From positions 124,001-188,000 of the IMG/VR virus record IMGVR_UViG_3300043446_003193: a DNA stretch of 64,000 nt; one strand, given 5' to 3'. Shown one piece after another: positions 1,897 to 63,480 of this stretch (the stretch's first letter is position 1; each line of letters opens with the position of its first letter). The position numbers were made by a program, and so were the translations under genes. The notes beneath the pieces were generated by a model. That model searched no databases, was not told the origin of the DNA, and saw nothing but the letters and a program-made list of their open reading frames with translations.

Positions 1897-1905
1897 TATA
1901 AATAT
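1897..1905 (-). promoter_or_regulatory. Putative late promoter motif ATATTTATA
   Basis: Intergenic, 18 nt upstream of ATG 1878. Confidence 0.65.
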
Positions 1906-1912
1906 CTTTATG

Positions 1913-2236
1913 TTATGGTTTTGGGTATTTTGCTTTTACTTCTAAACATTTTTGTATATAAGCATCAATTTGTTCTTGATCTCCTTTTACAATCCCATCT
2001 AAATAATCCGTAATTGGTGGATATTCCAATTTTCTCCTTCTTTGATAATTCAATGCATTATATTCGGAAATCAATTCTGCTCTTTTTTCTTCAATATCGG
2101 ATGGTAATGTTATAATATTGCCATCCATATCTACAAGTTCTCCATTTATATTAGCACCCTTAATACCATATTTTTCATTTAATACTGAAATATCATCAAT
2201 ATAATCTATATCTATTATTTTATTTTTATTTATCAT
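1913..2236 (-). CDS. Putative tail-fibre assembly chaperone
   Basis: 107 aa directly after a fibre gene. C-terminal YQRRRKLEYPP...VKAKYPKP resembles small phage fibre-associated chaperones. Confidence 0.55.
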   Translation of the reverse strand: MINKNKIIDIDYIDDISVLNEKYGIKGANINGELVDMDGNIITLPSDIEEKRAELISEYNALNYQRRRKLEYPPITDYLDGIVKGDQEQIDAYIQKCLEVKAKYPKP

Positions 2237-2250
2237 AATTATTTATTTTT

Positions 2251-5200
2251 TTATATCCAATATCCCATTATCCATAATCCAATATAATGTGTACCTCCGG
2301 AATAACCAGTAGCTAAATTTGCATAAACACTTCCATTACTATTTACATTTATTATACCACTATCCATAAGACCGTAATATTGAACACCATTTGTTGTATT
2401 TGCGTTGGATGCATCACCATCATGCCATAATACAAATGATCCATAATCTGATCTAGTAAAAGTGCTTGCTGAATATGGGTATGGTCCTCCTGGTCCTGAC
2501 CAAGGATATGGAGTTGTATCAGTTGATGTACCAAATAAAGATACCGCATGATCACCTTGTCCTGCACCACCACTATATCCAGTAATATGATACCAACCCA
2601 ATACTTGAAGTGCTTTTACACCAGATGGTAAACCTAATCCGGTTGTTGAAAATGATGTTTGAACATTACCAGTTACCGATGCACACCATCCAATTGATGT
2701 TGTTAATACACAATATGTGTGTGCTTTGTAGTTTGCGGTACTAATAATTGGAACCGATGGACAAACAGCATTTGGATGTATTGATAATTTTGCCGTGTTA
2801 TTTGTATAGAATACGTGTCTAGAATTTGTTGCATCTCCACTAGAATGATATTGTATATCATAAATTGGTCCAGAAGTAAATCCATGTATAGTTGCTCCAG
2901 AATTAAATAAGTAAAGTTTTAATGAACCATCAGTATATCCACTTGAATAATCATTATTAAATCTTAATGCTGATGGTGTTGCTGTATTTACTTGTGCTGC
3001 ATTGTTTCCCGTATCAATTAAAATATTTCTTTTATCTTTAATTCTAAATCTTTCATCAAAAGTAGAACCATTCCACATTGTGAATATCATATCGGAACAG
3101 TTTGATCCTGCAGACCCACCTATATTACAAACTTTAATTTGTGCGTTACCAAGACCTGCACCGGCTGTACTGTTATCTACTCCAAAATCAATTCCGGTTG
3201 AAGTTCCTGCTGTATTACTACAATTTGTTAAAGTTATAGATGCCGCATATCCTCCAGCAGATACTCCATTTATATGTAACGTGCTTTCCGGAGATGCAGT
3301 TCCTAATCCCATTGCTCCTGAACCTTGACAGAAAAATATTACATTATTTCCTAATTCATTTATATAAAGTGGTTTTGAACCATGTGACTGTATCCAAGAA
3401 TAACTACAACAAGATACACCCATTCTCAAAGTTGCTCCAGTTGGTGAACCTAATCTTAACATACCCGTATTAGAGTCTCCAGTATTACCACATATATCTA
3501 ATAAAAACGATGGAGTACACGTTCCAATTCCAATTTTACCATCACCCTTTATAAACATTAAAGGTTTTGATACACCGCAGTTTGGCGTGGTACTTGTTCC
3601 AAAATAGATACCATTGTTAGGATCACTGCCGGAATAATCATATACTGCTATATGCAATGCTTCACCAAATGTTCCCGCAGTTTGACAAGTATATTCTTTA
3701 TATCCTATAAATCCATTTAATCCATTATCAGTAAATGCTATACCTTGCATTGCTCCATATGCCGAACTGCAGGTTCTCATTTCTATAAGTTGGTGATTAT
3801 CACTATCTATTAAAAGTAATGTATTTGCGTTTGGTGCACCTGCTCCATTTGGACAACTTGCATAAATGTGAACTTTTGCTAATGCAGAATTTGTTCCTAT
3901 ACCAATTTTTCCACCATCTCTTTGTAAATATAAATCTCTAACAACTCCAGCAGGTGTATATGATTGGATTACTGCTCCACATGCAGTTTGTCCACCAATT
4001 CTTAATTCTCCCGTTGAACTTCCAATTCTTGTATGCCAAACATCATAATCACAATAAACGTGTAAAATTGAAGTTGGGCAAGCGGTATTAATACCCACAT
4101 TACCATTTGGTAACCAAGATGTCCTTACAGTTCCACCAACATTATCAAAAACATATAAATTATCTGTACTATCATTATTTAATTGTAACCACCATTTAAT
4201 ATTTCCTGCGGTTGAAAATTGAATATTTGCTTCCGTATTTACATTACATGCTCTATCAATACGAATACCACCAACTCCATCTCCGGTTGTAGAATTATAT
4301 ACTGTAAATTGTAAACAAGGTGTTGATGTTCCTATACCAATTTTACCACCAATTATATTATTACCACCAAAACATGCATTACCAGTAGAACAAACTGTTC
4401 CAGAAGATAATATAGATGGTGAACATACTGCGGTAGAACCATATAATGTAGTTCCACTTAAAGTTCCTCCTACAAATGCACCGGCACATGATGTACCAAA
4501 ACAACCTATTGGTGAACATGCAATTGTAGATGCATAATTAGTTGTTCCACTCATTGTACCACCAATAAATGATGTAGCACATGCTGTACCAAAACATCCT
4601 ATTGGTGAACAAGATATAGTTGATGAATATGTTGTTGTACCTGTTATAGTACCAGTTCCTATTAAATTATTTTTAACACAAGTTGTTGTACCATCATCTA
4701 CAATGCAAGAATCTACAATATGAAAACCACTTTGTACTTTCGGAATGATATTTGTACTTAAACGAGTTTCATTGCCCAAATTATTATAAGTTTCTGGACC
4801 AGTGATCATTATTGATGATGTTAGTGCCGCTCCACTTACAATTTGGTGAACAAATATCCATTCATTATCAACAGAATCAAATAATAACGAACCAGAAACT
4901 TGCGGTGATGAACCACTATCAATTGCTGCCAATCCTGAAAATCTACTTGAAGGGTTTACAGAGTTTACTGTTATTAAATTAGTACCAATATTAAGAGTAC
5001 TTTGAGAAATATATTGTATTGATGATGAACCTTGTACTACTAAATTTTGACTAATATATAACGAACCTGTAATTGTTTGGTCGGCTTTATAAATATTTGA
5101 ACCAGTTGTTGCTAAACTTCCTGTCTTATTTTCTAATGAGTTTAATCTTGAAATATTAGATGCTGATACAGTTTCTAATGAATTAATTCTTGAAATATTA

Positions 5201-5643
5201 GATGCCGAAATTGTTTCCAATGAACCTATTCTACTTAAATTTGAAGCAGATATTGTTTCAATAGAATTTAATCTTGCCGAAGTAGAAGATGTAAATGTAT
5301 TGATATTAGTTATAGAAATATCAACACTTGAACTTTTACTCTCTAAACTATTTAATCTTCCAATATTAGAACCAGAAACTGTCTGTAAAGTAGTTAATTG
5401 AGATGAAACGGAAGAACTAAATGGATTAAATGAAGAAGTAAATACAAAAGCAGAAGCGGAATATCCATTTAATGTATTTGAATTGTCCGCAGTACCAGTT
5501 ATAGTAGTACTTCCTAAATTAATACTATTGATTTGTGAAAAGTTTGCAGTTGATCCTGAAAATGAAATAGTTCCGTCTGCAGATGCTGATATCTGTGCTA
5601 CTATATTTCCACAACTGTCTTTAAATCTATATTGTCCTGCCAT
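2251..5643 (-). CDS. Tail fibre / receptor-binding protein with Cys-rich distal region
   Basis: 1130 aa; coiled-coil repeats, ATTGSN module and repeated G(K/N)(I/V)GIGTxxP fibre repeats. Confidence 0.75.
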   Translation of the reverse strand: MAGQYRFKDSCGNIVAQISASADGTISFSGSTANFSQINSINLGSTTITGTADNSNTLNGYSASAFVFTSSFNPFSSSVSSQLTTLQTVSGSNIGRLNSLESKSSSVDISITNINTFTSSTSARLNSIETISASNLSRIGSLETISASNISRINSLETVSASNISRLNSLENKTGSLATTGSNIYKADQTITGSLYISQNLVVQGSSSIQYISQSTLNIGTNLITVNSVNPSSRFSGLAAIDSGSSPQVSGSLLFDSVDNEWIFVHQIVSGAALTSSIMITGPETYNNLGNETRLSTNIIPKVQSGFHIVDSCIVDDGTTTCVKNNLIGTGTITGTTTYSSTISCSPIGCFGTACATSFIGGTMSGTTNYASTIACSPIGCFGTSCAGAFVGGTLSGTTLYGSTAVCSPSILSSGTVCSTGNACFGGNNIIGGKIGIGTSTPCLQFTVYNSTTGDGVGGIRIDRACNVNTEANIQFSTAGNIKWWLQLNNDSTDNLYVFDNVGGTVRTSWLPNGNVGINTACPTSILHVYCDYDVWHTRIGSSTGELRIGGQTACGAVIQSYTPAGVVRDLYLQRDGGKIGIGTNSALAKVHIYASCPNGAGAPNANTLLLIDSDNHQLIEMRTCSSAYGAMQGIAFTDNGLNGFIGYKEYTCQTAGTFGEALHIAVYDYSGSDPNNGIYFGTSTTPNCGVSKPLMFIKGDGKIGIGTCTPSFLLDICGNTGDSNTGMLRLGSPTGATLRMGVSCCSYSWIQSHGSKPLYINELGNNVIFFCQGSGAMGLGTASPESTLHINGVSAGGYAASITLTNCSNTAGTSTGIDFGVDNSTAGAGLGNAQIKVCNIGGSAGSNCSDMIFTMWNGSTFDERFRIKDKRNILIDTGNNAAQVNTATPSALRFNNDYSSGYTDGSLKLYLFNSGATIHGFTSGPIYDIQYHSSGDATNSRHVFYTNNTAKLSIHPNAVCPSVPIISTANYKAHTYCVLTTSIGWCASVTGNVQTSFSTTGLGLPSGVKALQVLGWYHITGYSGGAGQGDHAVSLFGTSTDTTPYPWSGPGGPYPYSASTFTRSDYGSFVLWHDGDASNANTTNGVQYYGLMDSGIINVNSNGSVYANLATGYSGGTHYIGLWIMGYWI
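4420..4650 (-). repeat. Coding 93-nt (31-aa) Cys-containing tandem repeat
   Basis: GTT.Y.ST..CSPIGCFGT.CA..F.GGT.S repeated about 2.4 times. Confidence 0.8.
5125..5290 (-). repeat. Coding 42-nt (14-aa) tandem repeats
   Basis: RLNSIETISASNLS / RIGSLETISASNIS / RINSLETVSASNIS; related copies near 7765-7910. Confidence 0.8.
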
Positions 5644-15614: not shown

Positions 15615-15623
15615 TATAAATAT
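15615..15623 (-). promoter_or_regulatory. Putative late promoter motif ATATTTATA
   Basis: Directly after a terminator, upstream of 15562. Confidence 0.65.
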
Positions 15624-15652
15624 AAAAGGATTGATGTTTCCACCAATCCTTT
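15624..15652 (-). terminator. Intrinsic terminator
   Basis: Minus strand AAAGGATTGGTG-GAAA-CATCAATCCTTTT: long stem, GAAA loop, U tract, downstream of 15680..17593. Confidence 0.75.
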
Positions 15653-17626: not shown

Positions 17627-17635
17627 TATAAATAT
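17627..17635 (-). promoter_or_regulatory. Putative late promoter motif ATATTTATA
   Basis: Intergenic, upstream of 17593. Confidence 0.65.
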
Positions 17636-17670: not shown

Positions 17671-18009
17671 TTAAAAAAATCCACCCAGATCTATAACACC
17701 TACATTCTGCATTGAACTATCTGCAACAGGTGAAGTAGTACCAACTGTTCCAACTCTTTGAATATAAACTGAAGCGGAAACTGCTGTTCTATTAATCGCA
17801 TCTAAACTTGCAGAAACTTGATTATCAACCACCGCCATTGCTCCACTTACAATTACTGAATACTCATCATCAGTTCTTGCCTTAAATGTTGATGATCCAG
17901 AAACTATTAATGCAGATCCGGTTGAATTTCCTACGATTACTACCGAACCTGTAATTGGAACATCAAAATTACTAAAATCTATTTGTTTAGGTTGAATTAA
18001 CTCTGCCAT
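17671..18009 (-). CDS. Small virion adaptor protein
   Basis: 112 aa, TGS/SGS-rich, ends VIDLGGFF. Confidence 0.55.
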   Translation of the reverse strand: MAELIQPKQIDFSNFDVPITGSVVIVGNSTGSALIVSGSSTFKARTDDEYSVIVSGAMAVVDNQVSASLDAINRTAVSASVYIQRVGTVGTTSPVADSSMQNVGVIDLGGFF

Positions 18010-18034: not shown

Positions 18035-18043
18035 TATAAATAT
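18035..18043 (-). promoter_or_regulatory. Putative late promoter motif ATATTTATA
   Basis: Intergenic, upstream of 18009. Confidence 0.65.
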
Positions 18044-22280: not shown

Positions 22281-22603
22281 TACCCTCTATATTCTACGTC
22301 TGCAGAAAGATATACTTTATCTCTTTCGTTTAGAACGTATGGAAAATTTGATTTTTTAAATTTTATATTAACACCATCTGAACTTTCTTCAATAAGATAA
22401 TCTACTGGATTGATTATTACGGTATTTATGTAAACTAAAATTCTATTTTCGTTTTTTTGTCTTTTTATTTCTCTTAAATAGAGTTTAAAAAACCAAAATT
22501 TTGCAACAAAAGTATAATAAGTTTCATCAACACTTTTAAATGTACAAAGTGCTTGATTATCGGTATTGTAGGTATTAACCATATCCAAAAAACTATTCTT
22601 CAT
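22280..22603 (-). CDS. Neck-associated hypothetical protein
   Basis: 107 aa, ILVYIN motif paralogous to the C-terminal domain of 22603..23703; coupled start/stop. Confidence 0.5.
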   Translation of the reverse strand: MKNSFLDMVNTYNTDNQALCTFKSVDETYYTFVAKFWFFKLYLREIKRQKNENRILVYINTVIINPVDYLIEESSDGVNIKFKKSNFPYVLNERDKVYLSADVEYRG

Positions 22604-23703: not shown

Positions 23704-23704
23704 T

Positions 23705-24160: not shown

Positions 24161-24161
24161 A

Positions 24162-25358: not shown

Positions 25359-25384
25359 AATAAAAATTTATAGTTTTATACTAC

Positions 25385-25393
25385 TATAAATAT
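25385..25393 (-). promoter_or_regulatory. Putative late promoter motif ATATTTATA
   Basis: After the capsid terminator, upstream of the neck gene. Confidence 0.65.
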
Positions 25394-25398
25394 AGAAA

Positions 25399-25432: not shown

Positions 25433-25457
25433 TTTTTATTACTCTAATCCGTTAAGA

Positions 25458-28470: not shown

Positions 28471-28479
28471 AATAAATAT
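28471..28479 (-). promoter_or_regulatory. Putative late promoter motif variant ATATTTATT
   Basis: Upstream of the scaffold-capsid unit. Confidence 0.55.
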
Positions 28480-30952: not shown

Positions 30953-31549
30953 TTATTCTGATATTTTACGAATTTGTTGCTCTAATTTTATCAATCTTTC
31001 CTTTATAGTATAAATATGTTTATTTGTTCTTTTCCAAAAATTCTGATTACTTACACCACTTTCTTGCTTTATTTTACCATACCAATTCAAAAACCTTTCC
31101 ATTTCAGCAAGTTGTTTACTTATATTAGAAATTCCTTTTCCTATTTTGTGTGTTGCAGGAACATTTTCTTTTTTAAGTTCTAACCAACGATTTTCTTTAA
31201 CAACACTATATCCAGTTAAATCTGCTTGCCTTTTTCCTTTAGATTTTTCATCACCTTTTTTAGTGAACGCATATGGAGTATTATAAGGACCAGCCGCATC
31301 GCTAGTTGTCATTTCATCAACCATTCGTTCTCTAACCATTTTACGAATGATTTCTTTTATTTTTTGAAGTTCTTCTTCCTTTTTATCAGGTAATCCAGCG
31401 TGTTTTGTAGATGCAAAATCTTTAGCATCTTTATCGGACATTGAATCTGCTGCTTTTTGTACTTCTGGAGATGGGTTTTCCATATCACCTTTTTGAGCGG
31501 CATGAACCATTCCCATAAATCTTTGTTGTGCTTTAGATACTGCTGGCAT
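30953..31549 (-). CDS. DUF3008-like multi-module head protein
   Basis: MPAVSKAQQRFMG...DFASTKH.GLP.K N-terminal module followed by further modules after Glu sites. Confidence 0.6.
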   Translation of the reverse strand: MPAVSKAQQRFMGMVHAAQKGDMENPSPEVQKAADSMSDKDAKDFASTKHAGLPDKKEEELQKIKEIIRKMVRERMVDEMTTSDAAGPYNTPYAFTKKGDEKSKGKRQADLTGYSVVKENRWLELKKENVPATHKIGKGISNISKQLAEMERFLNWYGKIKQESGVSNQNFWKRTNKHIYTIKERLIKLEQQIRKISE

Positions 31550-32699: not shown

Positions 32700-32708
32700 T
32701 ATAAATAT
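32700..32708 (-). promoter_or_regulatory. Putative late promoter motif ATATTTATA
   Basis: Intergenic, upstream of 32681. Confidence 0.65.
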
Positions 32709-35603: not shown

Positions 35604-35612
35604 TATAAATAT
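35604..35612 (-). promoter_or_regulatory. Putative late promoter motif ATATTTATA
   Basis: Intergenic, upstream of 35586. Confidence 0.65.
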
Positions 35613-38564: not shown

Positions 38565-38573
38565 TATAAATAT
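38565..38573 (-). promoter_or_regulatory. Putative late promoter motif ATATTTATA
   Basis: Intergenic, upstream of 38545. Confidence 0.65.
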
Positions 38574-42670: not shown

Positions 42671-42679
42671 TATAAATAT
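42671..42679 (-). promoter_or_regulatory. Putative late promoter motif ATATTTATA
   Basis: Ends 3 nt before ATG 42667. Confidence 0.55.
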
Positions 42680-55400: not shown

Positions 55401-55491
55401 TAAAGTATCTACTATTTGGATCAGTATCTTCTAAAAATATATTATATCTCTCTAAATTTTCTGGAAATAGAGTCTTTTTAAGAATGGCCAT
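49396..55491 (-). CDS. Giant tail/central fibre protein with C-terminal peptidase S74 chaperone
   Basis: 2031 aa; G.IGG(F/W).I repeats; ends SSDIRLKKNI...PVAYSWN...GFIAQDV...YNELIPIMV. Confidence 0.8.
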   Translation of the reverse strand: MAILKKTLFPENLERYNIFLEDTDPNSRYFRITELPGTFSGGKNSFLIQGSPELVADTLIKIEIKDALGNVIYHEPGEGIPEYYEGTSKVVAVYVYPDTAFGPCTITILGELSEYEDANGLLTPIPSNWENQYNVRWQKVVNVNPIIANTTKIRFYRRPTVDITETILPIYNRTVNRVTISGSVDGVSVQPTSGSNFRTFKGDTIYELKISGSNFSSSMEGETITITGLNQSYSTIIKDVVNSKKALATIPYYETSSNATNAVQYVTDFSSASFTLPYNESVTLTNSAISSSYAKIKIANLETFSGDVNRLKIFGKRKSDIGNYSLLEDIQLESNELFQTDAYSGSVNVRIGQFSSQKIIDDFWKYKKHEENTYYTATQNDSVLASSVKLQDDNTLNTTQHPQRVFYNHNDIDFLSNTEYQLDFSLLLQSSSFGYGKLNVFGVGPAFVVEDSDLGYGKLLGEFNVSESFRRFDKQQINFKPDTDGQGQIFFNIHQGEWYLSNISLRASQETNFSPNEVTLNVNVPTKVNNDTYDFRFEFYDINNNYVPVTLEKEITFTGGTDTIVQKSLTVTPDNTLFSFSGSGETIGVSSINFDISKIGLTGSVTFYSSAFDANGDYINPSVYASEPFYPGLLTNVTETSATLLVSNFTGSISSSKISRVQYTASCEDVRDLVNIYRVDQGAVGADGIDGQNFIAIANKNQFVYDPDDNNVPAQLNDFIDIKLTNNIVSGSIYITSGSYLPKLALISTEYIGKSTESVYRVFSGDDQHDVAMLGTNVASWSYATPTQLTHKGTYYFNKGGYSSSVQLEGVLKGDKSKNLNAVSNANQFFYKMTDLSLSPSGQTITIDVKRNNLGSTTNEITVTSGSSKPALTVGSNNNTTGVQSYSINGSDYSYSSGATTYTFTAYDLNNAVYSDTITITPVIAESQIAVTVSNENTTFPAYSGGTVFGGFLASSGSISVKVGSEDISYASTIGNNKFSASISSSSNVTAVLTNNNYSITALSADSGSINLKVTYRDGRGSDSTFVKLVTYSKAKAGTPNVLVAVSPSAQSINANSKTSGSATPTALTITALESGTSRFTSIGTPTYTNGLAGTVSSNVITITSTASSITGSTAQVTIPVNYTDSEGTSGTKNVVATVSKALAAPPAVVVSIEKDGQTITKSTAGSYGTPSSFKLYVNEGGSAYAYDATSPYVIPSFRISSVTNGTNAGVDGDGYTTITPSTPSSTSGLIVSITGSYVDSEGTSTTFYKTHNVNVSSDGTDGNTGATGPGIVLRGEYAAGTTYYYTTVAGSSRRDAVYQSSGGVTKYYATLQQTTGNAPTDGASNSYWEYLGTQDFFVAAKIAIFDESYVKNTLNIGTNASGSAANITLAGGTTKPFVSIGQGVQSYGTNGIWLGISGSSFVPKVSFVSGSNYFKYDASATNIVDIGGAISATTLTAQTGSIGGFEIQAGKLIGGTATNGVILDGGQSRVIAGNSSGNSQAVMSIAGFHAGNTAFNSAPFRVDTAGALVASNANISGKITATDGTIGGWVIGQNSISKDKITLNAGGTGADNYIQITGESTYAGNRVLIHPGELLTTVPGAGSAITATTAQTYFSIGTSTPQNLYLYNVNGSTVATLSATSTNMYTSLSATSTYSINASVKYRIDLEWNNAPTMEYTYVASTGTFSTVDQAALNIAYHIKYNLSQDPTNLNYYSSITRGWIGGSAEAAVTAFISYFNTKKGTSYTTLSQMDGQYIDFYTSFDSVTGTATVTSTLSYGGTSIGSISRTVSPSTTSTQEEFADTSFQFITLGKTTNPLQISTTKSNGLVANYRKTRWHIDYYDSFTLFGFGTIPAGYAIWAESIGVDSYSPSSTNYYAKGLSLTATSLTKQVEISERGLQALFNSSQDSTGNFLKVEDIATPTAANANIKSAGYFAHYGELHVKGDIAGFSTSLSSDIRLKKNIVDIDETEIEDMDRLHPVAYSWNSDSENKKHYGFIAQDVEKIYPNLTDGRIMGEYLTIKYNELIPIMVKQIQNLKKEVNTLKQVLSNGK

Positions 55492-55502: not shown

Positions 55503-55511
55503 CATAAATAT
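55503..55511 (-). promoter_or_regulatory. Putative late promoter motif variant ATATTTATG
   Basis: Upstream of 55491. Confidence 0.55.
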
Positions 55512-55532: not shown

Positions 55533-55541
55533 ATATTTATA
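55533..55541 (+). promoter_or_regulatory. Putative late promoter motif ATATTTATA (plus strand)
   Basis: Upstream of the only plus-strand gene, 55602. Confidence 0.6.
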
Positions 55542-55544: not shown

Positions 55545-55594
55545 AGAAAACTAATAAATACTATATTGTATTATAGAAAACTAAAGAAAACTAA
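55545..55594 (+). repeat. Three AGAAAACTAA direct repeats (candidate operator)
   Basis: Copies start at 55545, 55575 and 55585. Confidence 0.8.
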
Positions 55595-55601: not shown

Positions 55602-55787
55602 ATGAAATACGCAATGTTGCAAATTAAAAAAGAAACCCATGAACTTCTCAAATCATATTGTGAAGAACACGGGTTTAAAATGGGTAGTTTAGTTGAAAAT
55701 CTAATCAAAAAACACGTTGGTGTTTCAAAACCTCAATCAGGTGTGTTGAAGGCTGATAAAGTTACTGTTAGAAATCAATCTTACTAA
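55602..55787 (+). CDS. Small DNA-binding regulator, ribbon-helix-helix-like
   Basis: Only credible plus-strand gene. A short beta strand (YAMLQI) precedes two helices (ETHELLKSYCEEHG.KM..LVE.LI); it has its own upstream ATATTTATA motif. Confidence 0.7.
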   Translation: MKYAMLQIKKETHELLKSYCEEHGFKMGSLVENLIKKHVGVSKPQSGVLKADKVTVRNQSY

Positions 55788-58700
55788 ATCCATTCTCTTT
55801 TTTTATTTCTATTAATCCATCTACGATATCTCTCATAGCATCTAAGTGAGAAATAACCCAAATGAAATCAAATTGAGTTTTAAGATATTGCATCATTCCG
55901 AATAGGGATGATAGATTATCACTATCTAATGTACCAAATCCCTCATCAATCACTAAGAAGTTTGGTCTAGGTAATCCACATATGTTTATCAATGCAACTC
56001 TGATTGCTAAACCACTAATAAACTTTTCCATACCACTACACATTTCTAATGCCCATTCTTGATCCTCGTAAACTATCTTTGCGTTGATATTCTTGCCATC
56101 TACTTCCATTACAACCCCGAAATCAACTACTTGTCCTAAGATATTATTTACTTCCGTTTGAATAACCGGTAATGCTTTAGAAATTAATTCATATGGAATA
56201 CCATCTCTCTTTACAGCATCTAAATAATAGGTGTATAGGCGGTTCTTTTCTTCTAAATCCTTAACTTCATCCATTTTAGCTTTGATACCGTCTATAAACG
56301 ATTGCAATTGAGAAATAGAACCATTTACAGAAGTTATATCTTTATTAATTTGTTTAATTACTTTATCAACTTCTGATTTAAGAATTTCTTTTTCTTTAAT
56401 TTGTTTTTCTAATTGTTTGTTTGTTTCAATTGTATCTTCGTTTTCGTAATATTTTTCAATATCTTCTTCAACTTTATCCAATTGAGTTTGTAATAATTCT
56501 TCTTTTGTTTCTAAACCTTTGTATTCCATTTCGGCTTTCTCTAATATAACTTTTATTCTGGAATATCTTGTTTTGATTTCTTGTAATTCATTATATTGTT
56601 CTTCTACACCTTCCATAGTATCCAATGTTTGTTGAATACCTGTACAATTAACCAATGCTTCTCTAAATTCTTCTTTCAATTGAGGTAATAATTCTTTTAC
56701 TCTCATTGCATCTTTTACAAAAGTATTATCACAACAAAACTCACAATTTGGGTCGTATTTATGATTATTCAAATGTGCAATCGTTTCTTCTGCAGAACTT
56801 ACATGCACTTTTGCAATATCATAAGTTTTAGTTGCTTCGGTTAATGCTTTTTGTTCTTTTTGATAATTTGAATATGCCGTTTCAATATCAACGCCGCCAA
56901 ATGATTTCTTATCTTCTATTGATTGTGATAATTCATTAAGGGTATTGGTATGATTTTCTATTTTAGTTTCAGTATTGGTATATTCCGTTTCTAAATCTTC
57001 AATTTGTTTTGTAATTAATTTTCTTTTATCTTCCAAAGTGGGTAAATCTAAATTAGAATCAATTGGTGCAAGTTGTCTTGTTAATCCTAACACCTCGTTC
57101 TCAATACTTTCTTTTATTTTTGCTTCAGAATTTAATTGTTGTTGTAATTCTTTTAATTCACCTTTTTTATATTTAATCTCAATACCTTTATTTGCCAATT
57201 CTGTTGTAAAATCAGTTTTCTTAAAATTTTTGATAAGAACACTTACTTCTCTAATATCTTCTACTGCTGTATCAAACAACTTATCAAAGATATTCAATCC
57301 CATAAATTGTGCCAATAAATCTTTTCTTTCACTTTGTGATTTATCAATGAATAGTGCATTATTCCCTTGCAGAGATAATGCAGTTAATACGAAATCCTCA
57401 TACTTACCAACATATTGTTCAATGATGGTGTTTGTATCTCTTCTTTCTGTTCCATTAAGTGAAGTTCTTTCATCTCCATCCATTTTATAGAACTCAACAT
57501 CTACTTTTACATTCTTTCCTTTGTTGATTGTTTTAGCAGTTCTTTCAATAAAATATCTTTCACCATTAATATCAAATTCTAACTTACATTTGAAATCGGT
57601 TTTACGATTATTCATTATGTTTGCTGCTTTGAATGCTCTACTACTCTTATCGTATAAACAAAATGAAATAGAGTCAAATAGAGATGATTTACCACTTGCA
57701 TTTGGTGCAAATAATCCCATCAATCCGTTTAATTTACTGAAATCAATAACATTGTCCTCACCATAGGAGAACATGTTACTAAACTCAAACTTTATAGGTT
57801 TCCATTGGATATTTCTTGCAACATCATCTAATACAATTCTACTATTAATATCTCTATTGATTGTTTCCAATTCAGATAAATCTTTATCTGTCACAAATGG
57901 CATCATTCTCTTAACATAATCATGTATTAAAGAGTTTTGATGGTTTACATCTGTAATATCTTCAAAATCTAATTTGTTTTGTCTATTTCCGGTCTTTAAT
58001 TTGGAAAGTGAATCCGTTCTAATGATTGTAAAATCTTCAAGTCCGTATCTCATCTTAATTTCTGTCAATACTTTCTTTGTATCGGCAGTATCGGTATTAG
58101 ATAAACGAACTCTCAATCTTGCATTCTTTGGCATATTGTTTACAACCGGAACTACACCATTATCTACATCCAAAGTATAATAACCATAATCGTTTGGTAA
58201 ATCAACACTCTCATAAGTTAGAGTATCCATATCCCAAACTAAGAAACCATGTTTATCTAATGTTTCACCGAAGTTTTGTTGAACCAATGAACCAGCATAA
58301 ACTACCTTACAACCTGCCGGACTAATCATCTCTTGTCTTTTATGAATATCACCCAATAGAGCTAAATCATATCCATCAAATATATCGGTTGTAAAATGTC
58401 TACTACTAACCACATAACCCACATCCGTAATAGAATTATCCACGGGGCCGTGGAATAATGCAATCTTTGTTTTTGCATCAATATCTTCTGCTTTAGGCCA
58501 ATTATCTTTATTATCAAAAATAGAATAAACAGCGAATGCAGTATCACCATATTTCCAAACTTGTGTATCTCTTAAATAATAAAAATTATCCAAATTCAAT
58601 GCTTCTACAATTGGAGTAAGAACATCAATTCTATCCAAATTATTCATATTACAATCGTGATTACCTGTAATAAGAATTGTAGGTGCTAATTTTGCACACT

Positions 58701-58914
58701 CCGTAAATAACCAACTAATCTCTCTAACTAATTCAGGAGACATTTCCAATTTAGCATGAGCAATATCACCTGCTAAATAAATGATTGCATTTTCCGTTCC
58801 TCTATTACGGATTTCCTCAAACATTTTTTCAAATACTTGTCTATACTCTTTGTGTCGTTTCACGTTACGGATATGTACGTCCGCAATATGGTAAATTGTT
58901 TTTAATTTACTCAT
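55768..58914 (-). CDS. Fused SbcD/Mre11 (gp47) - SbcC/Rad50 (gp46) recombination nuclease
   Basis: Phosphoesterase motifs ADVH, GDIAH, GNHD, GDIH; Walker A NASGKSS, Zn hook CEFC, signature SGME, Walker B IDEGFG, ISH. Confidence 0.92.
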   Translation of the reverse strand: MSKLKTIYHIADVHIRNVKRHKEYRQVFEKMFEEIRNRGTENAIIYLAGDIAHAKLEMSPELVREISWLFTECAKLAPTILITGNHDCNMNNLDRIDVLTPIVEALNLDNFYYLRDTQVWKYGDTAFAVYSIFDNKDNWPKAEDIDAKTKIALFHGPVDNSITDVGYVVSSRHFTTDIFDGYDLALLGDIHKRQEMISPAGCKVVYAGSLVQQNFGETLDKHGFLVWDMDTLTYESVDLPNDYGYYTLDVDNGVVPVVNNMPKNARLRVRLSNTDTADTKKVLTEIKMRYGLEDFTIIRTDSLSKLKTGNRQNKLDFEDITDVNHQNSLIHDYVKRMMPFVTDKDLSELETINRDINSRIVLDDVARNIQWKPIKFEFSNMFSYGEDNVIDFSKLNGLMGLFAPNASGKSSLFDSISFCLYDKSSRAFKAANIMNNRKTDFKCKLEFDINGERYFIERTAKTINKGKNVKVDVEFYKMDGDERTSLNGTERRDTNTIIEQYVGKYEDFVLTALSLQGNNALFIDKSQSERKDLLAQFMGLNIFDKLFDTAVEDIREVSVLIKNFKKTDFTTELANKGIEIKYKKGELKELQQQLNSEAKIKESIENEVLGLTRQLAPIDSNLDLPTLEDKRKLITKQIEDLETEYTNTETKIENHTNTLNELSQSIEDKKSFGGVDIETAYSNYQKEQKALTEATKTYDIAKVHVSSAEETIAHLNNHKYDPNCEFCCDNTFVKDAMRVKELLPQLKEEFREALVNCTGIQQTLDTMEGVEEQYNELQEIKTRYSRIKVILEKAEMEYKGLETKEELLQTQLDKVEEDIEKYYENEDTIETNKQLEKQIKEKEILKSEVDKVIKQINKDITSVNGSISQLQSFIDGIKAKMDEVKDLEEKNRLYTYYLDAVKRDGIPYELISKALPVIQTEVNNILGQVVDFGVVMEVDGKNINAKIVYEDQEWALEMCSGMEKFISGLAIRVALINICGLPRPNFLVIDEGFGTLDSDNLSSLFGMMQYLKTQFDFIWVISHLDAMRDIVDGLIEIKKENGFSKIDF

Positions 58915-59870
58915 AAACTATTTATTTTATTTAACAATAATTCTTCCGAAGTAAATTCTTTAGTTTTCTTTAGTTCTTCGTAGAATTTTTCATACCCCAT
59001 ATCGGCGGCATCTTTATCTTTTAAATACATCATTTTAACCTGTATTCCATTCTTTCTAAAATACTCTGCTGCTTTCAATGCCTCACTTATCGCATCGTTA
59101 TCTAATGAAATAATGATATCACTAACACCACTCATAAAGATTTTCTCAACTAATGATTTTGAAGGAAACTTACCTAATAGTGGAATGGCATTTCTTTTAA
59201 TTGTAATTGCATCAAATACACCCTCACAAAGTATAATTGGTTCATTCCAATTTACCTGAGAATCAAAACAAATTATATTTTTACTAATTGGTGGGTTTTT
59301 ATATTTCATCTTCTCTTCTGGATAATAAGAACGAGAAACAAAATAATTTAATGAACCATCGGAATTATAAGAAGGTATAATAACCCTTCTAGCGTATAAT
59401 CCTTCCATACAATATCCTATATTATATTTTATAATATCTTTTTCAGTAATACCCCTTTCAGTAAGATAATGCATGGCATGTTTATATTCAGGATTAAACC
59501 CTTTAGGAACCTCATTAAGAGGTTTAAATTCTTTTGGTAGGGAAATGAACACCTTTGTATCGGCATCCTCTAATTGTGGGTTATATTGAGAATCTCCATA
59601 TATTTCTCTAATAATAGAAATAGTCTTTCTATCAACATCCAACTTTTTTAATAAGGATGTTAGTTTTTTACCACCACTATTACACGTCCAACAATGCCAC
59701 TTTTGAGTTTCGGTATTAACTTGTAACTTTTGTTTGTGGTGATTACAAAACGGGCAATAAAATGCCAATTCGTTACCCCTTAATACGGAATAACTACCCA
59801 ACGCATTAGATAGCGTGGTCGTAACTATATTTTTATCAGTTTGCTTCAACACAACTGTAATATACAACAA
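58911..59870 (-). CDS. DNA primase (Zn finger + TOPRIM)
   Basis: CPFC...HCWTC, ILCEGVFD, LDND, KD motifs; the true start may be the in-frame GTG at 59852. Confidence 0.9.
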   Translation of the reverse strand: MLYITVVLKQTDKNIVTTTLSNALGSYSVLRGNELAFYCPFCNHHKQKLQVNTETQKWHCWTCNSGGKKLTSLLKKLDVDRKTISIIREIYGDSQYNPQLEDADTKVFISLPKEFKPLNEVPKGFNPEYKHAMHYLTERGITEKDIIKYNIGYCMEGLYARRVIIPSYNSDGSLNYFVSRSYYPEEKMKYKNPPISKNIICFDSQVNWNEPIILCEGVFDAITIKRNAIPLLGKFPSKSLVEKIFMSGVSDIIISLDNDAISEALKAAEYFRKNGIQVKMMYLKDKDAADMGYEKFYEELKKTKEFTSEELLLNKINSL

Positions 59871-59888
59871 ATATTTGATATTACCAAA
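59857..59888 (-). promoter_or_regulatory. Bacteroidota-type promoter (variant) upstream of primase
   Basis: Minus strand TTTG-N20-TATATTAC; shares TTGGTAAT with the portal-upstream site. Confidence 0.5.
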
Positions 59889-60324: not shown

Positions 60325-60537
60325 TTATTTAGTTTTTAATGTGTCTGAGTATTTTTTCTCATTCACTTCTCCACCTCTACCTGTTTTAAATTTAGCCGCA
60401 GTTAATACTTGCTCATCTGCTTTTTTCAAATCATTTGTAGTATATGGAGTTTTTGCTGCAACACCAGCGTCAAATCCAATTTTATCAACACCTAATGCTG
60501 ATTGTTGTGCTTTGTATGTATCTAATATTGTTGCCAT
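60325..60537 (-). CDS. Hypothetical protein
   Basis: 70 aa with an upstream ATATTTATA motif. Confidence 0.65.
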   Translation of the reverse strand: MATILDTYKAQQSALGVDKIGFDAGVAAKTPYTTNDLKKADEQVLTAAKFKTGRGGEVNEKKYSDTLKTK

Positions 60538-60554: not shown

Positions 60555-60563
60555 TATAAATAT
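60555..60563 (-). promoter_or_regulatory. Putative late promoter motif ATATTTATA
   Basis: Upstream of 60537. Confidence 0.65.
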
Positions 60564-60567: not shown

Positions 60568-61521
60568 TTATGTGTCAAATCGTACAATAAAATTAACTGT
60601 CAAATCATGTTCTGACTTTATTGGTTGTGGTAATTTTGCAACCGCCAATAAATCACAGTTATCATCATACAATCCAATTGTTGTAATAAATGGTGCTAAA
60701 AAAGAGCCAGTTGAATCTACCGAACTACTAACATCCCAATGATCAAACCCACCTGATATAGCGGAATTTACAGATGAACCAAATCTATAATCTAATATAT
60801 CACCATTTTCTAATACTGATTTTTTACGAATGTATTTTGCGGGTTGGGTTGTATATAATTTTTGTATTTTATTATCTGCTGTGTTTAATTCATATTCTCC
60901 ACCAACACTAACTATTGCAGTTGGATTTGTTGAAACATTGAATTCATCTTGCTCACAAATCAAAAGATATTCGTGCTCATAAATTGTTTCGGTAGATTTA
61001 TATTGTATATCCCATGTACCACCTAATTTTGAATTAGAACCACTTGTAATTACAACCAATCCTTGATTGTAAAATACATTTCCAATTCTATGATTACTTC
61101 CGCTCAATACTAAATTACTATACTTATCATCTACATAGTAAGTTCCACCATCATTTAATAAAACCGAACCCTTTTTTATTCCATCACCAATACAATTTTG
61201 TGGTATTGATATTACTTTTGCTGAACCACTTAAAAATCTTTCTGGATTTGTTTCATCATATACATTTGTTTTACTACCTAATCTATAAAATGGGTCATTT
61301 TCTTTTCCATTATAAAATTGGGCTCTAAGCTGTCCAAATACAGAATATTTGTTATATATTGACCCACTTAATAATCCGGTAGTAATTGTATTTGCATCAT
61401 TAGATGTATAGTTACCATCTACTGCTTCCAATAGTGTAACTCCTGCTGATGTTTTATCCCATTCTTTATAAGCTTTGAATGGTCTAATACTAATATCTGA
61501 TTTAGGTATTCTTTTTAACAT
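60568..61521 (-). CDS. Baseplate/tail structural protein
   Basis: Ends PFITTIGLYDD...LLAVAKL..PI; paralogous to 61595..62818. Confidence 0.6.
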   Translation of the reverse strand: MLKRIPKSDISIRPFKAYKEWDKTSAGVTLLEAVDGNYTSNDANTITTGLLSGSIYNKYSVFGQLRAQFYNGKENDPFYRLGSKTNVYDETNPERFLSGSAKVISIPQNCIGDGIKKGSVLLNDGGTYYVDDKYSNLVLSGSNHRIGNVFYNQGLVVITSGSNSKLGGTWDIQYKSTETIYEHEYLLICEQDEFNVSTNPTAIVSVGGEYELNTADNKIQKLYTTQPAKYIRKKSVLENGDILDYRFGSSVNSAISGGFDHWDVSSSVDSTGSFLAPFITTIGLYDDNCDLLAVAKLPQPIKSEHDLTVNFIVRFDT

Positions 61522-61527: not shown

Positions 61528-61536
61528 TATAAATAT
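61528..61536 (-). promoter_or_regulatory. Putative late promoter motif ATATTTATA
   Basis: After a terminator, 6 nt before ATG 61521. Confidence 0.65.
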
Positions 61537-61545: not shown

Positions 61546-61570
61546 AAAAACCCACCAAATTAAGGTGGGT
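61546..61570 (-). terminator. Intrinsic terminator
   Basis: Minus strand ACCCACC-TTAATTT-GGTGGGTTTTT. Confidence 0.8.
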
Positions 61571-61594: not shown

Positions 61595-62818
61595 TTAGAA
61601 GTCTAATTTAACTTTGATTGCAATCTCTTTATCAAAAGATTTTTCAATTGGTTTTGAAGTTTTAGCTACTGCTAATAATTCATTTGCGTCATCATACAAT
61701 CCAACAGTTGTAATGAAAACCTTAGGGTCTTTTTCAAATGTTGATTGAACGAATTGTCCAACTGAACCAGTTACGAATGTTGGGTTATTTGAGAAGTTAA
61801 ATTCTCTATTGTTTGCTCTTACGAAATAATGAGAGGTTGAAACATTCTCAGTTCTACGAGCTTGGAAATCTGCACCTAAATTAATTGCTTTAAATAAATT
61901 GATAGAACCAGTTAAGTTGTGATAAACACCACTTTGAGAACTAGTTGCACCCGCTAAATTACCACCAACACTTGCACTTATTGCAGATGGGTTTAATAAG
62001 ATAACACCCATATCAGGATAGAATAAACCATATCCTTTACCATTTGATGCTGTGTATGTACTAATAGATGATGTTAAAGCAGAACCAATGTTTAATGAAC
62101 CACTAACAATATTATAAACTCTACCTGCAGTTGTTACATTCTCATCTGTACCACCACTATCATCAATTAATGTAATTAAACCAACTGAACCAGAAAGTTT
62201 CAATGAGAAGTTTCCTGGGTCCAATCTTTCTTTATATCTTGCTCTATTTACATTAATTGCGTAGAAATTAGTTAAATCGTGTCCAGCTGCAGTTGAACCA
62301 CTATATACACTAAAGTACGGGTCAGCAGAATCTAATAATACATTTCTAAATTGGTTATAAACCGCTTTAGTAGGCATTGTAGATGAATCATCTTGTGTTA
62401 ATGTTGGTGCACCATATCCATCAACATCACCATACGCAATTGAGAATTGAACCTCTGCTGTATCTGATGATGGAGTTGCGTTATAAACATCAATATAGTA
62501 CTTACCACTTGCATCTGCAACTTGTGTTGAAGATGTATAGGCAACTGTCAATGAACCGGTATCACCACTCCATATACCAGAAGTTACTATTTCTGTTTTG
62601 TTAGTTACTTTATCAATTGCACCAAATTTTTTATAAATACCATTTGAAATAGTATTTGTATCTGCACTAATTTGTTCTCCTTGTCCTAAAAATGTGTTTA
62701 CGATTCTAACTAATTCGTTAGTATCTACCGGAGTACCTGTTGTATTTGCAGCAGTCGCTAAGTACTGTGATAAGTTACTTGCTAAAAGGGCTCCTCTATT
62801 GTCTCTTATTAATGCCAT
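61595..62818 (-). CDS. Baseplate/tail structural protein
   Basis: EFNFSNNPT...VFITTVGLYDDANELLAVAK.SKPI.K C-terminal domain. Confidence 0.6.
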   Translation of the reverse strand: MALIRDNRGALLASNLSQYLATAANTTGTPVDTNELVRIVNTFLGQGEQISADTNTISNGIYKKFGAIDKVTNKTEIVTSGIWSGDTGSLTVAYTSSTQVADASGKYYIDVYNATPSSDTAEVQFSIAYGDVDGYGAPTLTQDDSSTMPTKAVYNQFRNVLLDSADPYFSVYSGSTAAGHDLTNFYAINVNRARYKERLDPGNFSLKLSGSVGLITLIDDSGGTDENVTTAGRVYNIVSGSLNIGSALTSSISTYTASNGKGYGLFYPDMGVILLNPSAISASVGGNLAGATSSQSGVYHNLTGSINLFKAINLGADFQARRTENVSTSHYFVRANNREFNFSNNPTFVTGSVGQFVQSTFEKDPKVFITTVGLYDDANELLAVAKTSKPIEKSFDKEIAIKVKLDF

Positions 62819-62826
62819 AGTTTATA

Positions 62827-63450
62827 TTATTGAACGTAAGTTACTGTTACTGGAATAGTTTGTGAACCACCCGTTTCATTACCATAAACTGTGATTGTAG
62901 TTTTGATAGTAGATGTTAATGAACGGTTAGGAATAAATTTGAAAGATAAACCTTTAGCGATAGCTGCTGTTGCAGATACATCATCACCAATGAATACTGG
63001 TACTGAACCTACGTCAGATGTTACACCTTCACCTACAATATCACCTGCGTTTTTATTTGCCAATAGAATTGTATATCCTAAACTTCTATTTCCCGCTGGA
63101 GATGTAGTTGGTGATAAAGCAACTTCACCACTTCTTTGATTTACTGAAATATTAGGAACACCAAATTCAACAACAGGAATTCTAGTTGTGCTTTTTGGTA
63201 ATGTTACTAATTTGTATTTCATTACTTGAGTTTCATCTGGATTAGCTTCCAACACTGGCATATTTTTAATTGCCGCGTCGTAATATGCAGAACCCAATGG
63301 ATGAGCTGGCTCATATAAACTGTAATCAATTTCATCATCTGCTAAAGCAAATTGAGTGATGTTAATTCCTCCACCTGCTGCTAATTTCTCTCTACCTTTT
63401 TTGGTAAGAATAGCATCTACTGTTAATTCGGTGTTACTTAAATATCCCAT
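62827..63450 (-). CDS. Baseplate wedge-like structural protein
   Basis: DAILTKKGRE.LA...ITQFALADDEIDY N-terminus typical of baseplate/collar-like proteins. Confidence 0.55.
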   Translation of the reverse strand: MGYLSNTELTVDAILTKKGREKLAAGGGINITQFALADDEIDYSLYEPAHPLGSAYYDAAIKNMPVLEANPDETQVMKYKLVTLPKSTTRIPVVEFGVPNISVNQRSGEVALSPTTSPAGNRSLGYTILLANKNAGDIVGEGVTSDVGSVPVFIGDDVSATAAIAKGLSFKFIPNRSLTSTIKTTITVYGNETGGSQTIPVTVTYVQ

Positions 63451-63471
63451 AGTATTGTATTAATCGTTTGA

Positions 63472-63480
63472 TATAAATAT
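63472..63480 (-). promoter_or_regulatory. Putative late promoter motif ATATTTATA
   Basis: Upstream of 63450. Confidence 0.65.

What the first reader, a model, noticed from the sequence alone, without database searches (positions are those of the whole stretch)
1897..63480. Sense-strand ATATTTATA upstream motif: the T4 late promoter reversed
Seen: 14 intergenic copies (12 exact, 2 one-off variants) lie upstream of gene starts. On the coding strand the motif reads ATATTTATA, the reverse complement of the T4 gp55 promoter TATAAATA. Its orientation flips for the single plus-strand gene (55533), so it tracks gene direction. Two copies end only 3 and 6 nt before the ATG. Inference: a lineage-specific late promoter read by a divergent sigma factor, giving near-leaderless mRNAs. 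An RNA-level translation enhancer or antisense T4-type promoters are alternatives.
Basis: partly seen in the sequence, partly recalled or inferred. Interest (0 to 1): 0.6.

Follow-up and report, generated by a model that had tools for sequence, protein, structure and literature searches.

The report
Phage late promoter with its own sigma
ATATTTATA is very likely the core of a phage-specific promoter that switches on mainly virion genes in a large group of distant T4 relatives infecting Bacteroidota, and the phage carries a matching gp55-like sigma factor.

Summary
The window has 15 exact ATATTTATA copies. Thirteen are intergenic and all 13 lie in the sense orientation of the gene downstream. 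In the whole 209-kb phage genome, 31 sense copies lie in the 5.6% of DNA that is intergenic, against 0.7 expected, with one antisense copy.

The motif is also the top intergenic 9-mer in about 160 related metagenomic loci, and it is strand-biased in the cultured Flavobacterium phage immuto. It follows terminators, has no -35 element, and sits at a constrained distance from start codons.

The genome, outside the window, encodes a 230-aa sigma factor. Its N-terminal domain is homologous to T4 gp55 (hhalign 94%; best structural match is gp55 in PDB 7D7C). The motif co-occurs with this sigma family down to 43% identity.

"Reversed T4 promoter" is the wrong frame. TATTTATA matches TATAAATA at 6 of 8 positions in the same orientation, and it sits where the host's -7 box sits.

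No transcript-start data exist, so promoter function and the sigma assignment remain inferred. I rate it a new variant of a known kind.

The parts
63472..63480 (-). ATATTTATA, 21 nt upstream of the ATG of ORF 62827-63450 (207 aa, unknown)
61528..61536 (-). ATATTTATA, 6 nt upstream of the ATG of ORF 60568-61521. It follows a hairpin plus T-run at about 61546-61570.
60555..60563 (-). ATATTTATA, 17 nt upstream of ORF 60325-60537. That ORF heads the run endonuclease - primase - SbcD/SbcC fusion.
55533..55541 (+). ATATTTATA on the + strand, 60 nt upstream of the + strand Arc-like repressor gene 55602-55787. Conserved in 61 of 73 relatives.
55503..55511 (-). One-off variant ATATTTATG, 11 nt upstream of the 2031-aa tail-fibre gene 49396-55491. 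It is the other half of a divergent promoter region.
42671..42679 (-). ATATTTATA, 3 nt upstream of the ATG of ORF 38582-42667 (1361 aa, N-terminal cytidylyltransferase/NadR-like). Candidate leaderless mRNA.
38565..38573 (-). ATATTTATA, 19 nt upstream of ORF 37877-38545. That ORF heads the run that ends with the terminase large subunit 35618-37225.
35604..35612 (-). ATATTTATA, 17 nt upstream of ORF 34519-35586. The portal gene 32726-34474 follows.
32700..32708 (-). ATATTTATA, 21 nt upstream of ORF 31806-32678
31009..31017 (-). ATATTTATA inside the 3' part of ORF 30953-31549, 56 nt upstream of the next ORF 30659-30952. Possible internal promoter, or chance.
28471..28479 (-). Variant ATATTTATT, 146 nt upstream of the scaffold-like gene 27107-28324 and the major capsid gene 25458-27083. 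It is preceded by TTTCTTTAGTTTTCT and followed by a conserved structured leader.
25385..25393 (-). ATATTTATA, 26 nt upstream of ORF 24162-25358 (head-tail adaptor-like). It lies directly after the major-capsid-gene terminator at about 25400-25430. The terminator-then-motif arrangement is kept in relatives, with variable spacing and different downstream genes.
18035..18043 (-). ATATTTATA, 25 nt upstream of ORF 17671-18009
17627..17635 (-). ATATTTATA, 33 nt upstream of ORF 15680-17593 (637 aa)
15615..15623 (-). ATATTTATA, 52 nt upstream of the tail-fibre gene 11888-15562. It abuts a hairpin plus T-run at about 15624-15652.
5088..5096 (-). ATATTTATA deep inside ORF 2251-5643. The count of sense copies inside genes matches chance expectation, so this one is probably not functional.
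1897..1905 (-). ATATTTATA, 18 nt upstream of the ORF that ends in the window at 1878 (1047 aa)

Best explanation
ATATTTATA is the core recognition element of a phage-specific promoter class. It has no -35 or -33 element.

Proposed mechanism:
1. Host core RNA polymerase is redirected to the motif by a phage-encoded sigma factor of 230 aa at G000:C1:202292-202984, - strand, outside the window.
2. The sigma's N-terminal domain is a homologue of T4 gp55, that is, of sigma region 2.
3. The sigma gene lies in an operon driven by a host-type Bacteroidota promoter (-33 TTTG, -7 TAnnTTTG). This gives a cascade: host sigma-A, then phage sigma, then ATATTTATA promoters.
4. These promoters sit mainly in front of virion and morphogenesis genes.
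5. Transcription probably starts 4-5 nt after the motif, which places the motif at about -13 to -5. Most leaders would then be about 16-20 nt, and mRNAs would be leaderless where the ATG lies 3-4 nt after the motif.

Shown: the enrichment, the orientation, conservation across the clade, the absence of an upstream element, the spacing constraints, the existence and gp55 homology of the sigma, and its co-occurrence with the motif.

Inferred: that the motif is a promoter, that this sigma reads it, the start-site position, and the 'late' timing.
For: Enrichment, orientation and conservation:
- 45-fold intergenic, sense-only enrichment (31 against 0.69 expected; antisense 1). It is the top intergenic 9-mer of the genome.
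- It is again the top intergenic 9-mer in 80 loci around related capsid genes: 207 sense against 1 antisense. The same holds in loci whose sigma is only 53-64% identical (62:1) or 43-51% identical (33:4).
- Flavobacterium phage immuto has 16 forward and 1 reverse copies. They include sites just upstream of the terminase and tail-sheath genes and just after the capsid gene.

Promoter-like anatomy:
- After the capsid gene, a conserved hairpin plus T-run is followed at variable distance by the motif and then by different genes in different relatives. The motif therefore behaves as a module of its own.
- In 217 non-redundant sites there is no conserved upstream box. T is preferred just before the motif, and C is almost excluded at the 4th and 5th nt after it (2 and 5 of 217).
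- Spacing to the ATG peaks at 20-24 nt, with a sharp second peak at exactly 4 nt.
- The host-type promoters of the same phages show the matching peak, 6 nt after TATATT. That puts both boxes at -12 to -5, the mapped position of the sigma-A -7 box in Flavobacterium psychrophilum (PMC9723704).
- The motif clusters in the structural-gene region at 83-192 kb, while host-type promoters cluster elsewhere.

The sigma:
- It is the top hit of a gp55 HMM that I built.
- 17 of 89 family members hit Pfam Sigma70_r2.
- hhalign against a gp55 alignment gives 93.9% probability, E 1.5e-7.
- The AlphaFold model has pLDDT 93. Its best structural match is gp55 in 7D7C, Z 10.3, followed only by sigma factors.
- The gp55 residues that hold flipped promoter bases (Y97, T99, F86, L54; PMC7892883) align with conserved Y92, T/S94, Y/F82 and I/L/V51.
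- Homologues occur in immuto (E 1e-38) and Mel-JY01 (E 1e-42).
Against: - There is no transcript 5'-end data. The only RNA data were metatranscriptome contigs of relatives, which cannot show starts.
- The link between sigma and motif rests on co-occurrence and homology, not on binding.
- A few motif copies precede non-structural genes: the endonuclease/primase/SbcCD run and a NadR-like gene. 'Late' may therefore be too narrow.
- The capsid operon itself has only a degenerate version of the motif.
- T4's co-activator gp33 and clamp gp45 were not found, so the T4 mechanism cannot simply be transferred.
- The C-terminal domain of the sigma is only weakly sigma-4-like (Z 6.0). No upstream DNA element exists for it to read.
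Confidence: 0.7

Rival explanations
1. The motif is a promoter, but host sigma-A reads it as a strong, -33-independent ('extended -7') variant of TAnnTTTG, perhaps with a phage activator. The gp55-like sigma would serve another promoter set.
For: In the register inferred from the leaderless spacing, TATTTATA occupies -12 to -5 exactly like the host -7 box. It shares TA at -12/-11 and T at -8 and -6.
Against: It departs from the host consensus at the conserved TTG (A at -7 and at -5) and lacks the -33 TTTG that the phage's own host-type promoters keep invariably at fixed spacing. No other over-represented intergenic motif is left for the conserved phage sigma to read. The motif tracks the sigma family across distant relatives.
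Confidence: 0.12
2. The motif is the binding site of a phage DNA-binding regulator, an activator or repressor, and not the element contacted by sigma.
For: It is a 9-bp invariant sequence upstream of genes. The phage encodes at least one small regulator, the Arc-like protein at 55602-55787.
Against: The fixed 4-nt spacing to leaderless start codons, the C-free start region and the lack of any other promoter element after terminators indicate that the motif itself positions the polymerase. The motif is not an inverted or direct repeat, as dimeric regulators usually need. A different sequence, TTAGTTTTCT, looks like the Arc operator.
Confidence: 0.08
3. The motif acts in the RNA, as a translation enhancer for Shine-Dalgarno-less Bacteroidota initiation or as a processing site like that of T4 RegB.
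For: It is sense-strand specific, and its distance to the ATG is fairly narrow (mode 20-24 nt). Bacteroidota lack Shine-Dalgarno use (PMC6847099, abstract).
Against: It sits straight after intrinsic terminators, with no other promoter to make the RNA. Distances range from 3 to more than 100 nt. With 3-4 nt gaps it would sit too close to the start codon to act as a ribosome landing site. Its reverse complement is depleted inside genes (1 against 8.5 expected; 4 in 824 kb of coding DNA in relatives). That fits a DNA-level, orientation-sensitive signal, although one reading frame of TATAAATAT contains a stop codon.
Confidence: 0.06
4. These are T4-type TATAAATA promoters firing on the opposite strand and making antisense RNAs.
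For: The complementary strand reads TATAAATAT, which contains the T4 consensus.
Against: Such transcripts would run into the 3' end of the upstream gene, where no ORFs lie. The spacing is constrained relative to the downstream sense ATG, not to anything upstream. The motif flips together with the one + strand gene.
Confidence: 0.01

Closest known systems
T4 late promoters (TATAAATA at -13 to -6) read by gp55 with gp33 and the gp45 sliding clamp
   Same: - An 8-9 bp A/T-only element at about -10, with no -35 element, in front of virion genes.
- The phage belongs to the T4 capsid/portal/terminase superfamily.
- It encodes a gp55 homologue and clamp-loader gp44/gp62 homologues.
- The motif matches at 6 of 8 positions in the same orientation.
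   Different: - The two central bases are TT, not AA, and an extra conserved A precedes the element.
- The sigma is longer (230 aa against 185 aa) and has a C-terminal helical, HTH-like domain in place of gp55's tail.
- No gp33 or gp45 homologue was detected.
- Nearly all transcription runs on one strand.
Bacteroidota sigma-A promoters (-33 TTTG, -7 TAnnTTTG)
   Same: The box has the same inferred position (-12 to -5), starts with TA and is T-rich. The phage's own second promoter class fits this consensus: A-TTTGG, then 19 nt ending in CG, then TATATTtG.
   Different: The motif lacks the -33 element and replaces TTTG with TATA. Its copies concentrate in the structural-gene region, while the host-type promoters mostly lie elsewhere in the genome, though a few sites carry both.
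In-silico late promoter consensus of other T4-related phages (KVP40, 44RR, S-PM2, Aeh1; review PMC2988020)
   Same: Close variants of one short -10-like element are conserved within a lineage and predicted from intergenic over-representation.
   Different: Per the review, the first three consensus sequences are highly similar to T4's, and the one named variant (Aeh1) differs at -13/-12. I found no report of a TT-centred variant or of this sigma family.
Other phage-encoded sigma factors that reprogramme host polymerase (for example Bacillus phage SPO1 gp28 and gp33/34; named from my own knowledge, not tested here)
   Same: A temporal cascade in which an early gene product replaces the host sigma and reads a distinct promoter.
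   Different: Those promoters are two-part (-35 and -10). This one is a single box.

Membership tests
T4-type late transcription system | An 8-bp TATAAATA box at about -13 to -6 | tested here: not met
   The consensus is ATATTTATA in all sites used. TATTTATA matches at 6 of 8 positions. The position of about -12 to -5 is inferred from the 4-nt leaderless spacing.
T4-type late transcription system | No -35 or upstream sequence element | tested here: met
   No information content from -45 to -16 in 31 genomic sites and in 217 sites across the clade.
T4-type late transcription system | A gp55-family sigma (sigma region 2 homologue) encoded by the phage | tested here: met
   hhalign 93.9%, E 1.5e-7, against a gp55 alignment. 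The best structural match is 7d7c_F (gp55), Z 10.3, 118 residues aligned. 17 of 89 family members hit Sigma70_r2. PHROG and Pfam models do not hit the protein itself.
T4-type late transcription system | gp33 co-activator that binds the beta flap | tested here: inconclusive
   The sigma family shows no similarity to T4 gp33. A separate gp33 was not searched for exhaustively, and gp33 is poorly conserved.
T4-type late transcription system | gp45 (PCNA-like) sliding clamp as activator | tested here: inconclusive
   phrog_223 and T4 gp45 find nothing convincing, yet clamp-loader homologues gp44 (E 1e-36) and gp62 (E 5e-8) are present. A clamp probably exists but was not identified.
T4-type late transcription system | Drives late (virion) genes, after and dependent on replication | not testable with these tools
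   The downstream genes are mostly terminase, portal-region, adaptor and tail-fibre genes. No timing data exist.
Bacteroidota sigma-A promoter | -33 TTTG and -7 TAnnTTTG about 19-21 nt apart | tested here: not met
   The ATATTTATA sites have no conserved upstream TTTG. The phage's other promoter class does meet this feature.
Sigma-70 family, two-domain (sigma-2 plus sigma-4) architecture | A C-terminal region-4 helix-turn-helix | tested here: inconclusive
   Whole-chain alignments to sigma-E, sigma-H and sigma-B span residues 12-221. The C-terminal domain alone gives only Z 6.0 to sigma-A region 4, amid unrelated helical folds, and nothing in Foldseek.

The most novel reading that the evidence does not exclude
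[quoted passage not shown] A gp55-type region-2 domain is joined to a C-terminal flap-binding, sigma-4-like or gp33-like domain. It would read a re-tuned box (TATTTATA at -12 to -5) without a separate gp33, and it would often start exactly at the A of the ATG to make leaderless mRNAs in a host phylum that lacks Shine-Dalgarno use.
Probability: 0.3. Interest if true: 0.72.

Novelty: new variant of a known kind. Interest (0 to 1): 0.55.

Why it matters
- It gives a testable promoter and sigma pair for a very large, mostly uncultured group of freshwater and estuarine giant phages. The sigma family has more than 1,300 clusters at 50% identity, and one member of the group, Flavobacterium phage immuto, is in culture.
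- It shows how the T4 late-transcription module diverged in a phylum with a different promoter grammar. The element sits where the host -7 box sits but has its own letters, and the sigma has gained a second domain.
- It offers a compact, host-orthogonal promoter and sigma pair as a possible tool for Bacteroidota genetics.
- The motif can be used to annotate operon starts and true start codons in these phage genomes.

Tried and rejected
Searches for the sigma that gave nothing:
- The genome search on the phage's own genome with T4 gp55, phrog_234, phrog_12791, phrog_223, Sigma70_r2 and Sigma70_r4_2. In the gp55 and PHROG searches the quick first-look filter passed no candidate at all, so those blanks were not informative. 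In the two Pfam searches it passed one candidate, which scored nothing.
- phmmer with T4 gp55 alone.
- tblastn of T4 gp55 against all phage records did not list immuto or RM378 among the 60 rows shown of 2,025 matching records.
- PHROG and Pfam scans of about 40 proteins found no sigma.

Leads rejected:
- The annotated 'sigma factor' of phage RM378 is unrelated to this family. RM378 shows no strand bias of the motif (3:3).
- No similarity between the sigma family and gp33.
- The gp55 H95 position is F or Y in this family, but it also varies within gp55 homologues. I therefore dropped the idea that it explains the AA-to-TT change.

Blanks on side questions:
- Foldseek on the C-terminal domain gave nothing.
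- The ESM Atlas gave nothing useful for the 407-aa protein weakly similar to gp45.
- Rfam found nothing in the window.
- Literature searches for the motif, for immuto, for Mel-JY01 and for Bacteroidota T4-like late promoters found nothing on this signal.

RNA evidence:
- Only metatranscriptome contigs of relatives were on hand. Depth is 100-5,000 over 25401-28400, the capsid and scaffold genes, and at most 25 over 22601-25400.
- This fits a transcription unit that ends at the capsid-gene terminator. It is confounded by sequence conservation and by how the runs were chosen, and contigs cannot show RNA ends.

My strict hairpin scan found terminators in front of only 3 of 31 sites. Terminator-promoter pairs are therefore a subset, not the rule.

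Full report
WHAT THE WINDOW IS

The window is bases 124001-188000 of a 209,443-bp virus record that is rated complete. G+C is about 32%. About 205 of 207 ORFs lie on the - strand.

The window carries a T4-type major capsid protein, portal and large terminase (phrog_138, phrog_213, phrog_2). It also carries tail fibres with C-terminal chaperone domains and a fused SbcD/SbcC nuclease.

By capsid protein, the closest cultured relatives are:
- Microcystis phage Mel-JY01, 55% identity.
- Flavobacterium phage vB_FspM_immuto, 53%.
- Rhodothermus phage RM378, 39%.
- Classical T4-like phages, about 26%.

It is therefore a distant member of the T4 superfamily. Its promoter grammar (below) and its relative immuto point to a Bacteroidota host. 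The host assignment is an inference.

THE OBSERVATION

- One search finds 15 exact ATATTTATA in the window, 14 on the - strand. Twelve of those 14 are intergenic, and so is the single + strand copy. Two lie inside ORFs.
- In the whole genome, 31 sense copies fall in the 11.8 kb of intergenic DNA, against 0.69 expected (P about 1e-39). There is one intergenic antisense copy.
- Inside genes the sense count equals expectation (7 against 7.7). The antisense count is low (1 against 8.5).
- The motif is the most frequent intergenic 9-mer of the genome.
- The + strand copy precedes a real + strand gene, an Arc-like ribbon-helix-helix repressor (phrog_3180, E 5e-6). In 61 of 73 related loci the exact motif stands upstream of that gene in its own sense.

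IS IT FUNCTIONAL, AND AS WHAT?

Conservation:
- In 80 metagenomic loci around related capsid genes (78-98% identity, 933 kb), the motif is again the top intergenic 9-mer: 207 sense against 1 antisense.
- The same holds around genes for the sigma described below, at 53-64% identity (62:1) and at 43-51% identity (33:4).
- Phage immuto has 16 forward and 1 reverse copies. Some lie just upstream of the terminase and tail-sheath genes and just after the capsid gene.

Modularity: downstream of the capsid gene, a conserved hairpin plus T-run is followed at variable distance by the motif and then by different genes in different relatives. That is how a terminator-promoter junction behaves.

Anatomy, from 217 non-redundant sites:
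- No upstream box.
- A/T-rich sequence from -15 to -2 relative to the motif's first base.
- T before the motif in 64% of sites.
- C almost absent at the 4th and 5th nt after the motif (2 and 5 of 217), where A or G dominates.

Spacing to the start codon peaks at 20-24 nt. There is a sharp second peak at exactly 4 nt (12 sites, against 3 at 3 nt and 1 at 5 nt). One orthologous gene (product MANLIRLKQI...) keeps the 4-nt gap while the four letters vary. A fixed distance with free sequence is what a start site set by a -10-like box would give for a leaderless mRNA.

A SECOND PROMOTER CLASS AS AN INTERNAL RULER

The phage has a second motif class: A-TTTGG, then 19 nt ending in CG, then TATATT-t-G. 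This matches the Bacteroidota sigma-A promoter, -33 TTTG and -7 TAnnTTTG.
- These sites cluster at 0-70 kb and 183-208 kb of the genome. ATATTTATA clusters at 83-192 kb, among the structural genes.
- Their short-gap genes peak at 6 nt after TATATT. That places the 8-nt box at -12 to -5, as mapped for sigma-A in Flavobacterium psychrophilum (PMC9723704).
- By the same logic, ATATTTATA lies at -13 to -5 and TATTTATA at -12 to -5.

THE SIGMA FACTOR

- Standard models did not find a sigma.
- A gp55 HMM that I built from seven diverse T4-like phages ranked one ORF first (E 0.0015). It is G000:C1:202292-202984 (-), 230 aa, 14 kb beyond the window.
- It belongs to a large family: 3,308 close hits and 1,310 clusters at 50% identity.
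- 17 of 89 family members reach Pfam Sigma70_r2.
- A profile-profile comparison with the gp55 alignment gives 93.9% probability, E 1.5e-7, over 92 columns.
- The AlphaFold model is confident, pLDDT 93. Its best structural match is gp55 in the T4 late open complex 7D7C (Z 10.3), and all other top matches are sigma factors.
- In T4, gp55 flips the non-template bases at -12, -9 and -8 into pockets lined by N13, L54, R57, F86, H95, Y97 and T99 (PMC7892883). In the alignment, Y97, T99, F86 and L54 correspond to conserved Y92, T/S94, Y/F82 and I/L/V51.
- The C-terminal 100 residues form a helical, HTH-like domain. Its best match is sigma-A region 4, at only Z 6.0, so its nature is open.
- The gene is the sixth in an operon that starts at a host-type promoter.
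- Homologues exist in immuto and Mel-JY01. RM378 has only a weak hit and no motif bias.

MOST LIKELY MECHANISM

1. Early on, host sigma-A holoenzyme transcribes the operon that holds the sigma gene.
2. The new sigma then directs core polymerase to ATATTTATA boxes in front of the morphogenesis genes.
3. Initiation 4-5 nt downstream gives short leaders or leaderless mRNAs.

Steps 1 to 3 are inferred. The parts list and their statistics are shown.

RELATION TO T4

T4's box is TATAAATA at -13 to -6. Its reverse complement, TATTTATA, differs from it only at the two central bases, because TAT..ATA is self-complementary. The motif is therefore better described as a same-orientation variant at 6 of 8 positions, at nearly the same place, than as a reversed promoter.
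- System features met: no -35 element, a gp55 homologue, virion genes downstream.
- Not met: the exact box sequence.
- Open: gp33 and the gp45 clamp. Neither was found, although clamp-loader homologues are present.

The T4 review asks why no fused late sigma exists. This two-domain protein is a candidate answer, but the identity of the second domain is unproven.

RIVALS

- Host sigma-A reading a -33-less variant: possible but less likely. The box departs from the conserved TTG, and no other motif is left for the conserved phage sigma.
- A regulator binding site: unlikely, given the start-site geometry.
- An RNA-level element: unlikely, given the terminator junctions and the 3-4 nt gaps.
- Antisense T4-type promoters: contradicted by all the positional data.

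LIMITS

- There are no 5'-end data.
- Metatranscriptome contigs of relatives cover the capsid and scaffold genes heavily and the genes after the terminator barely. Conservation and run selection confound this, and contigs show no RNA ends.
- My ORF map uses ATG starts only, so a few gaps to the start codon may be off.

VERDICT

This is a real, strongly selected signal. It is most likely a phage-specific late promoter read by a divergent gp55-like sigma. I rate it a new variant of a known kind, of moderate interest, and higher if the sigma proves to be a natural single-chain gp55-plus-sigma-4 factor.

Noticed in passing
Genome-wide; in the window at about 59859-59888 (-). The best examples are at genome 6.8-46 kb and 205-208 kb.: A second promoter class: A-TTTGG, then 19 nt ending in CG, then TATATT-t-G. 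It matches the Bacteroidota sigma-A consensus (-33 TTTG, -7 TAnnTTTG). There are 67 non-redundant copies in the clade, and the gap to leaderless ATGs peaks at 6 nt. It points to a Bacteroidota host.
   Followed up: yes
G000:C1:202292-202984 (-), outside the window (locus L097:14292-14984): A 230-aa gp55-like sigma factor with an extra C-terminal helical domain. The family is very large and well conserved (80-93% identity among close relatives), and it is annotated only as a hypothetical protein wherever a source names it.
   Followed up: yes
window 55545-55594 (three copies) and 28491-28500 (one copy): On the - strand, which is the sense strand of nearly all genes, the 10-mer TTAGTTTTCT occurs in only four places in the genome, all intergenic (its reverse complement AGAAAACTAA also has one copy inside a gene). 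Three are in the leader of the + strand Arc-like repressor gene. One is immediately upstream of the degenerate late box of the scaffold/capsid operon. It is a likely operator that links the Arc-like protein to capsid-operon control.
   Followed up: partly
window 28325-28436 (-): A conserved leader of about 110 nt in front of the scaffold-like and major capsid genes. The predicted stems show compensatory changes; for example, one pair is A-U in 13 relatives and G-C in 11. There is no Rfam match.
   Followed up: partly
window 55768-58914 (-): One 1048-aa ORF joins an SbcD-like phosphoesterase (T4 gp47-like) to an SbcC/SMC-like ATPase (T4 gp46-like). These are separate genes in T4.
   Followed up: no
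window 22601-28600: In four metatranscriptomes from different studies, contigs of relatives cover 25401-28400 (capsid and scaffold genes) at summed depths of 100-5,000, but 22601-25400 at 25 or less. The drop coincides with the terminator after the capsid gene. It is confounded by conservation and by how the runs were chosen.
   Followed up: partly
Coding regions of the whole genome and of loci L010-L089: The reverse complement of the motif is rare inside genes: 1 against 8.5 expected in the genome, and 4 in about 820 kb of coding DNA in relatives. The sense motif occurs at the expected rate. This may reflect selection against antisense promoters, although one reading frame of TATAAATAT contains a stop codon.
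   Followed up: partly
window 38582-42667 (-) and 42752-44140 (-): A 1361-aa protein with an N-terminal cytidylyltransferase/NadR-like domain, and a family-7 glycosyltransferase fused to a concanavalin-like lectin domain. Both lie among the structural genes. Relatives of this clade are reported to modify their DNA (immuto appears in a paper on 7-deazaguanine derivatives in phages).
   Followed up: no
genome 63164-64812 (-), outside the window: Clamp-loader homologues of T4 gp44 (E 1e-36) and gp62 (E 5e-8) are present, but no recognisable gp45 clamp was found. The clamp is either very divergent or of another type.
   Followed up: partly
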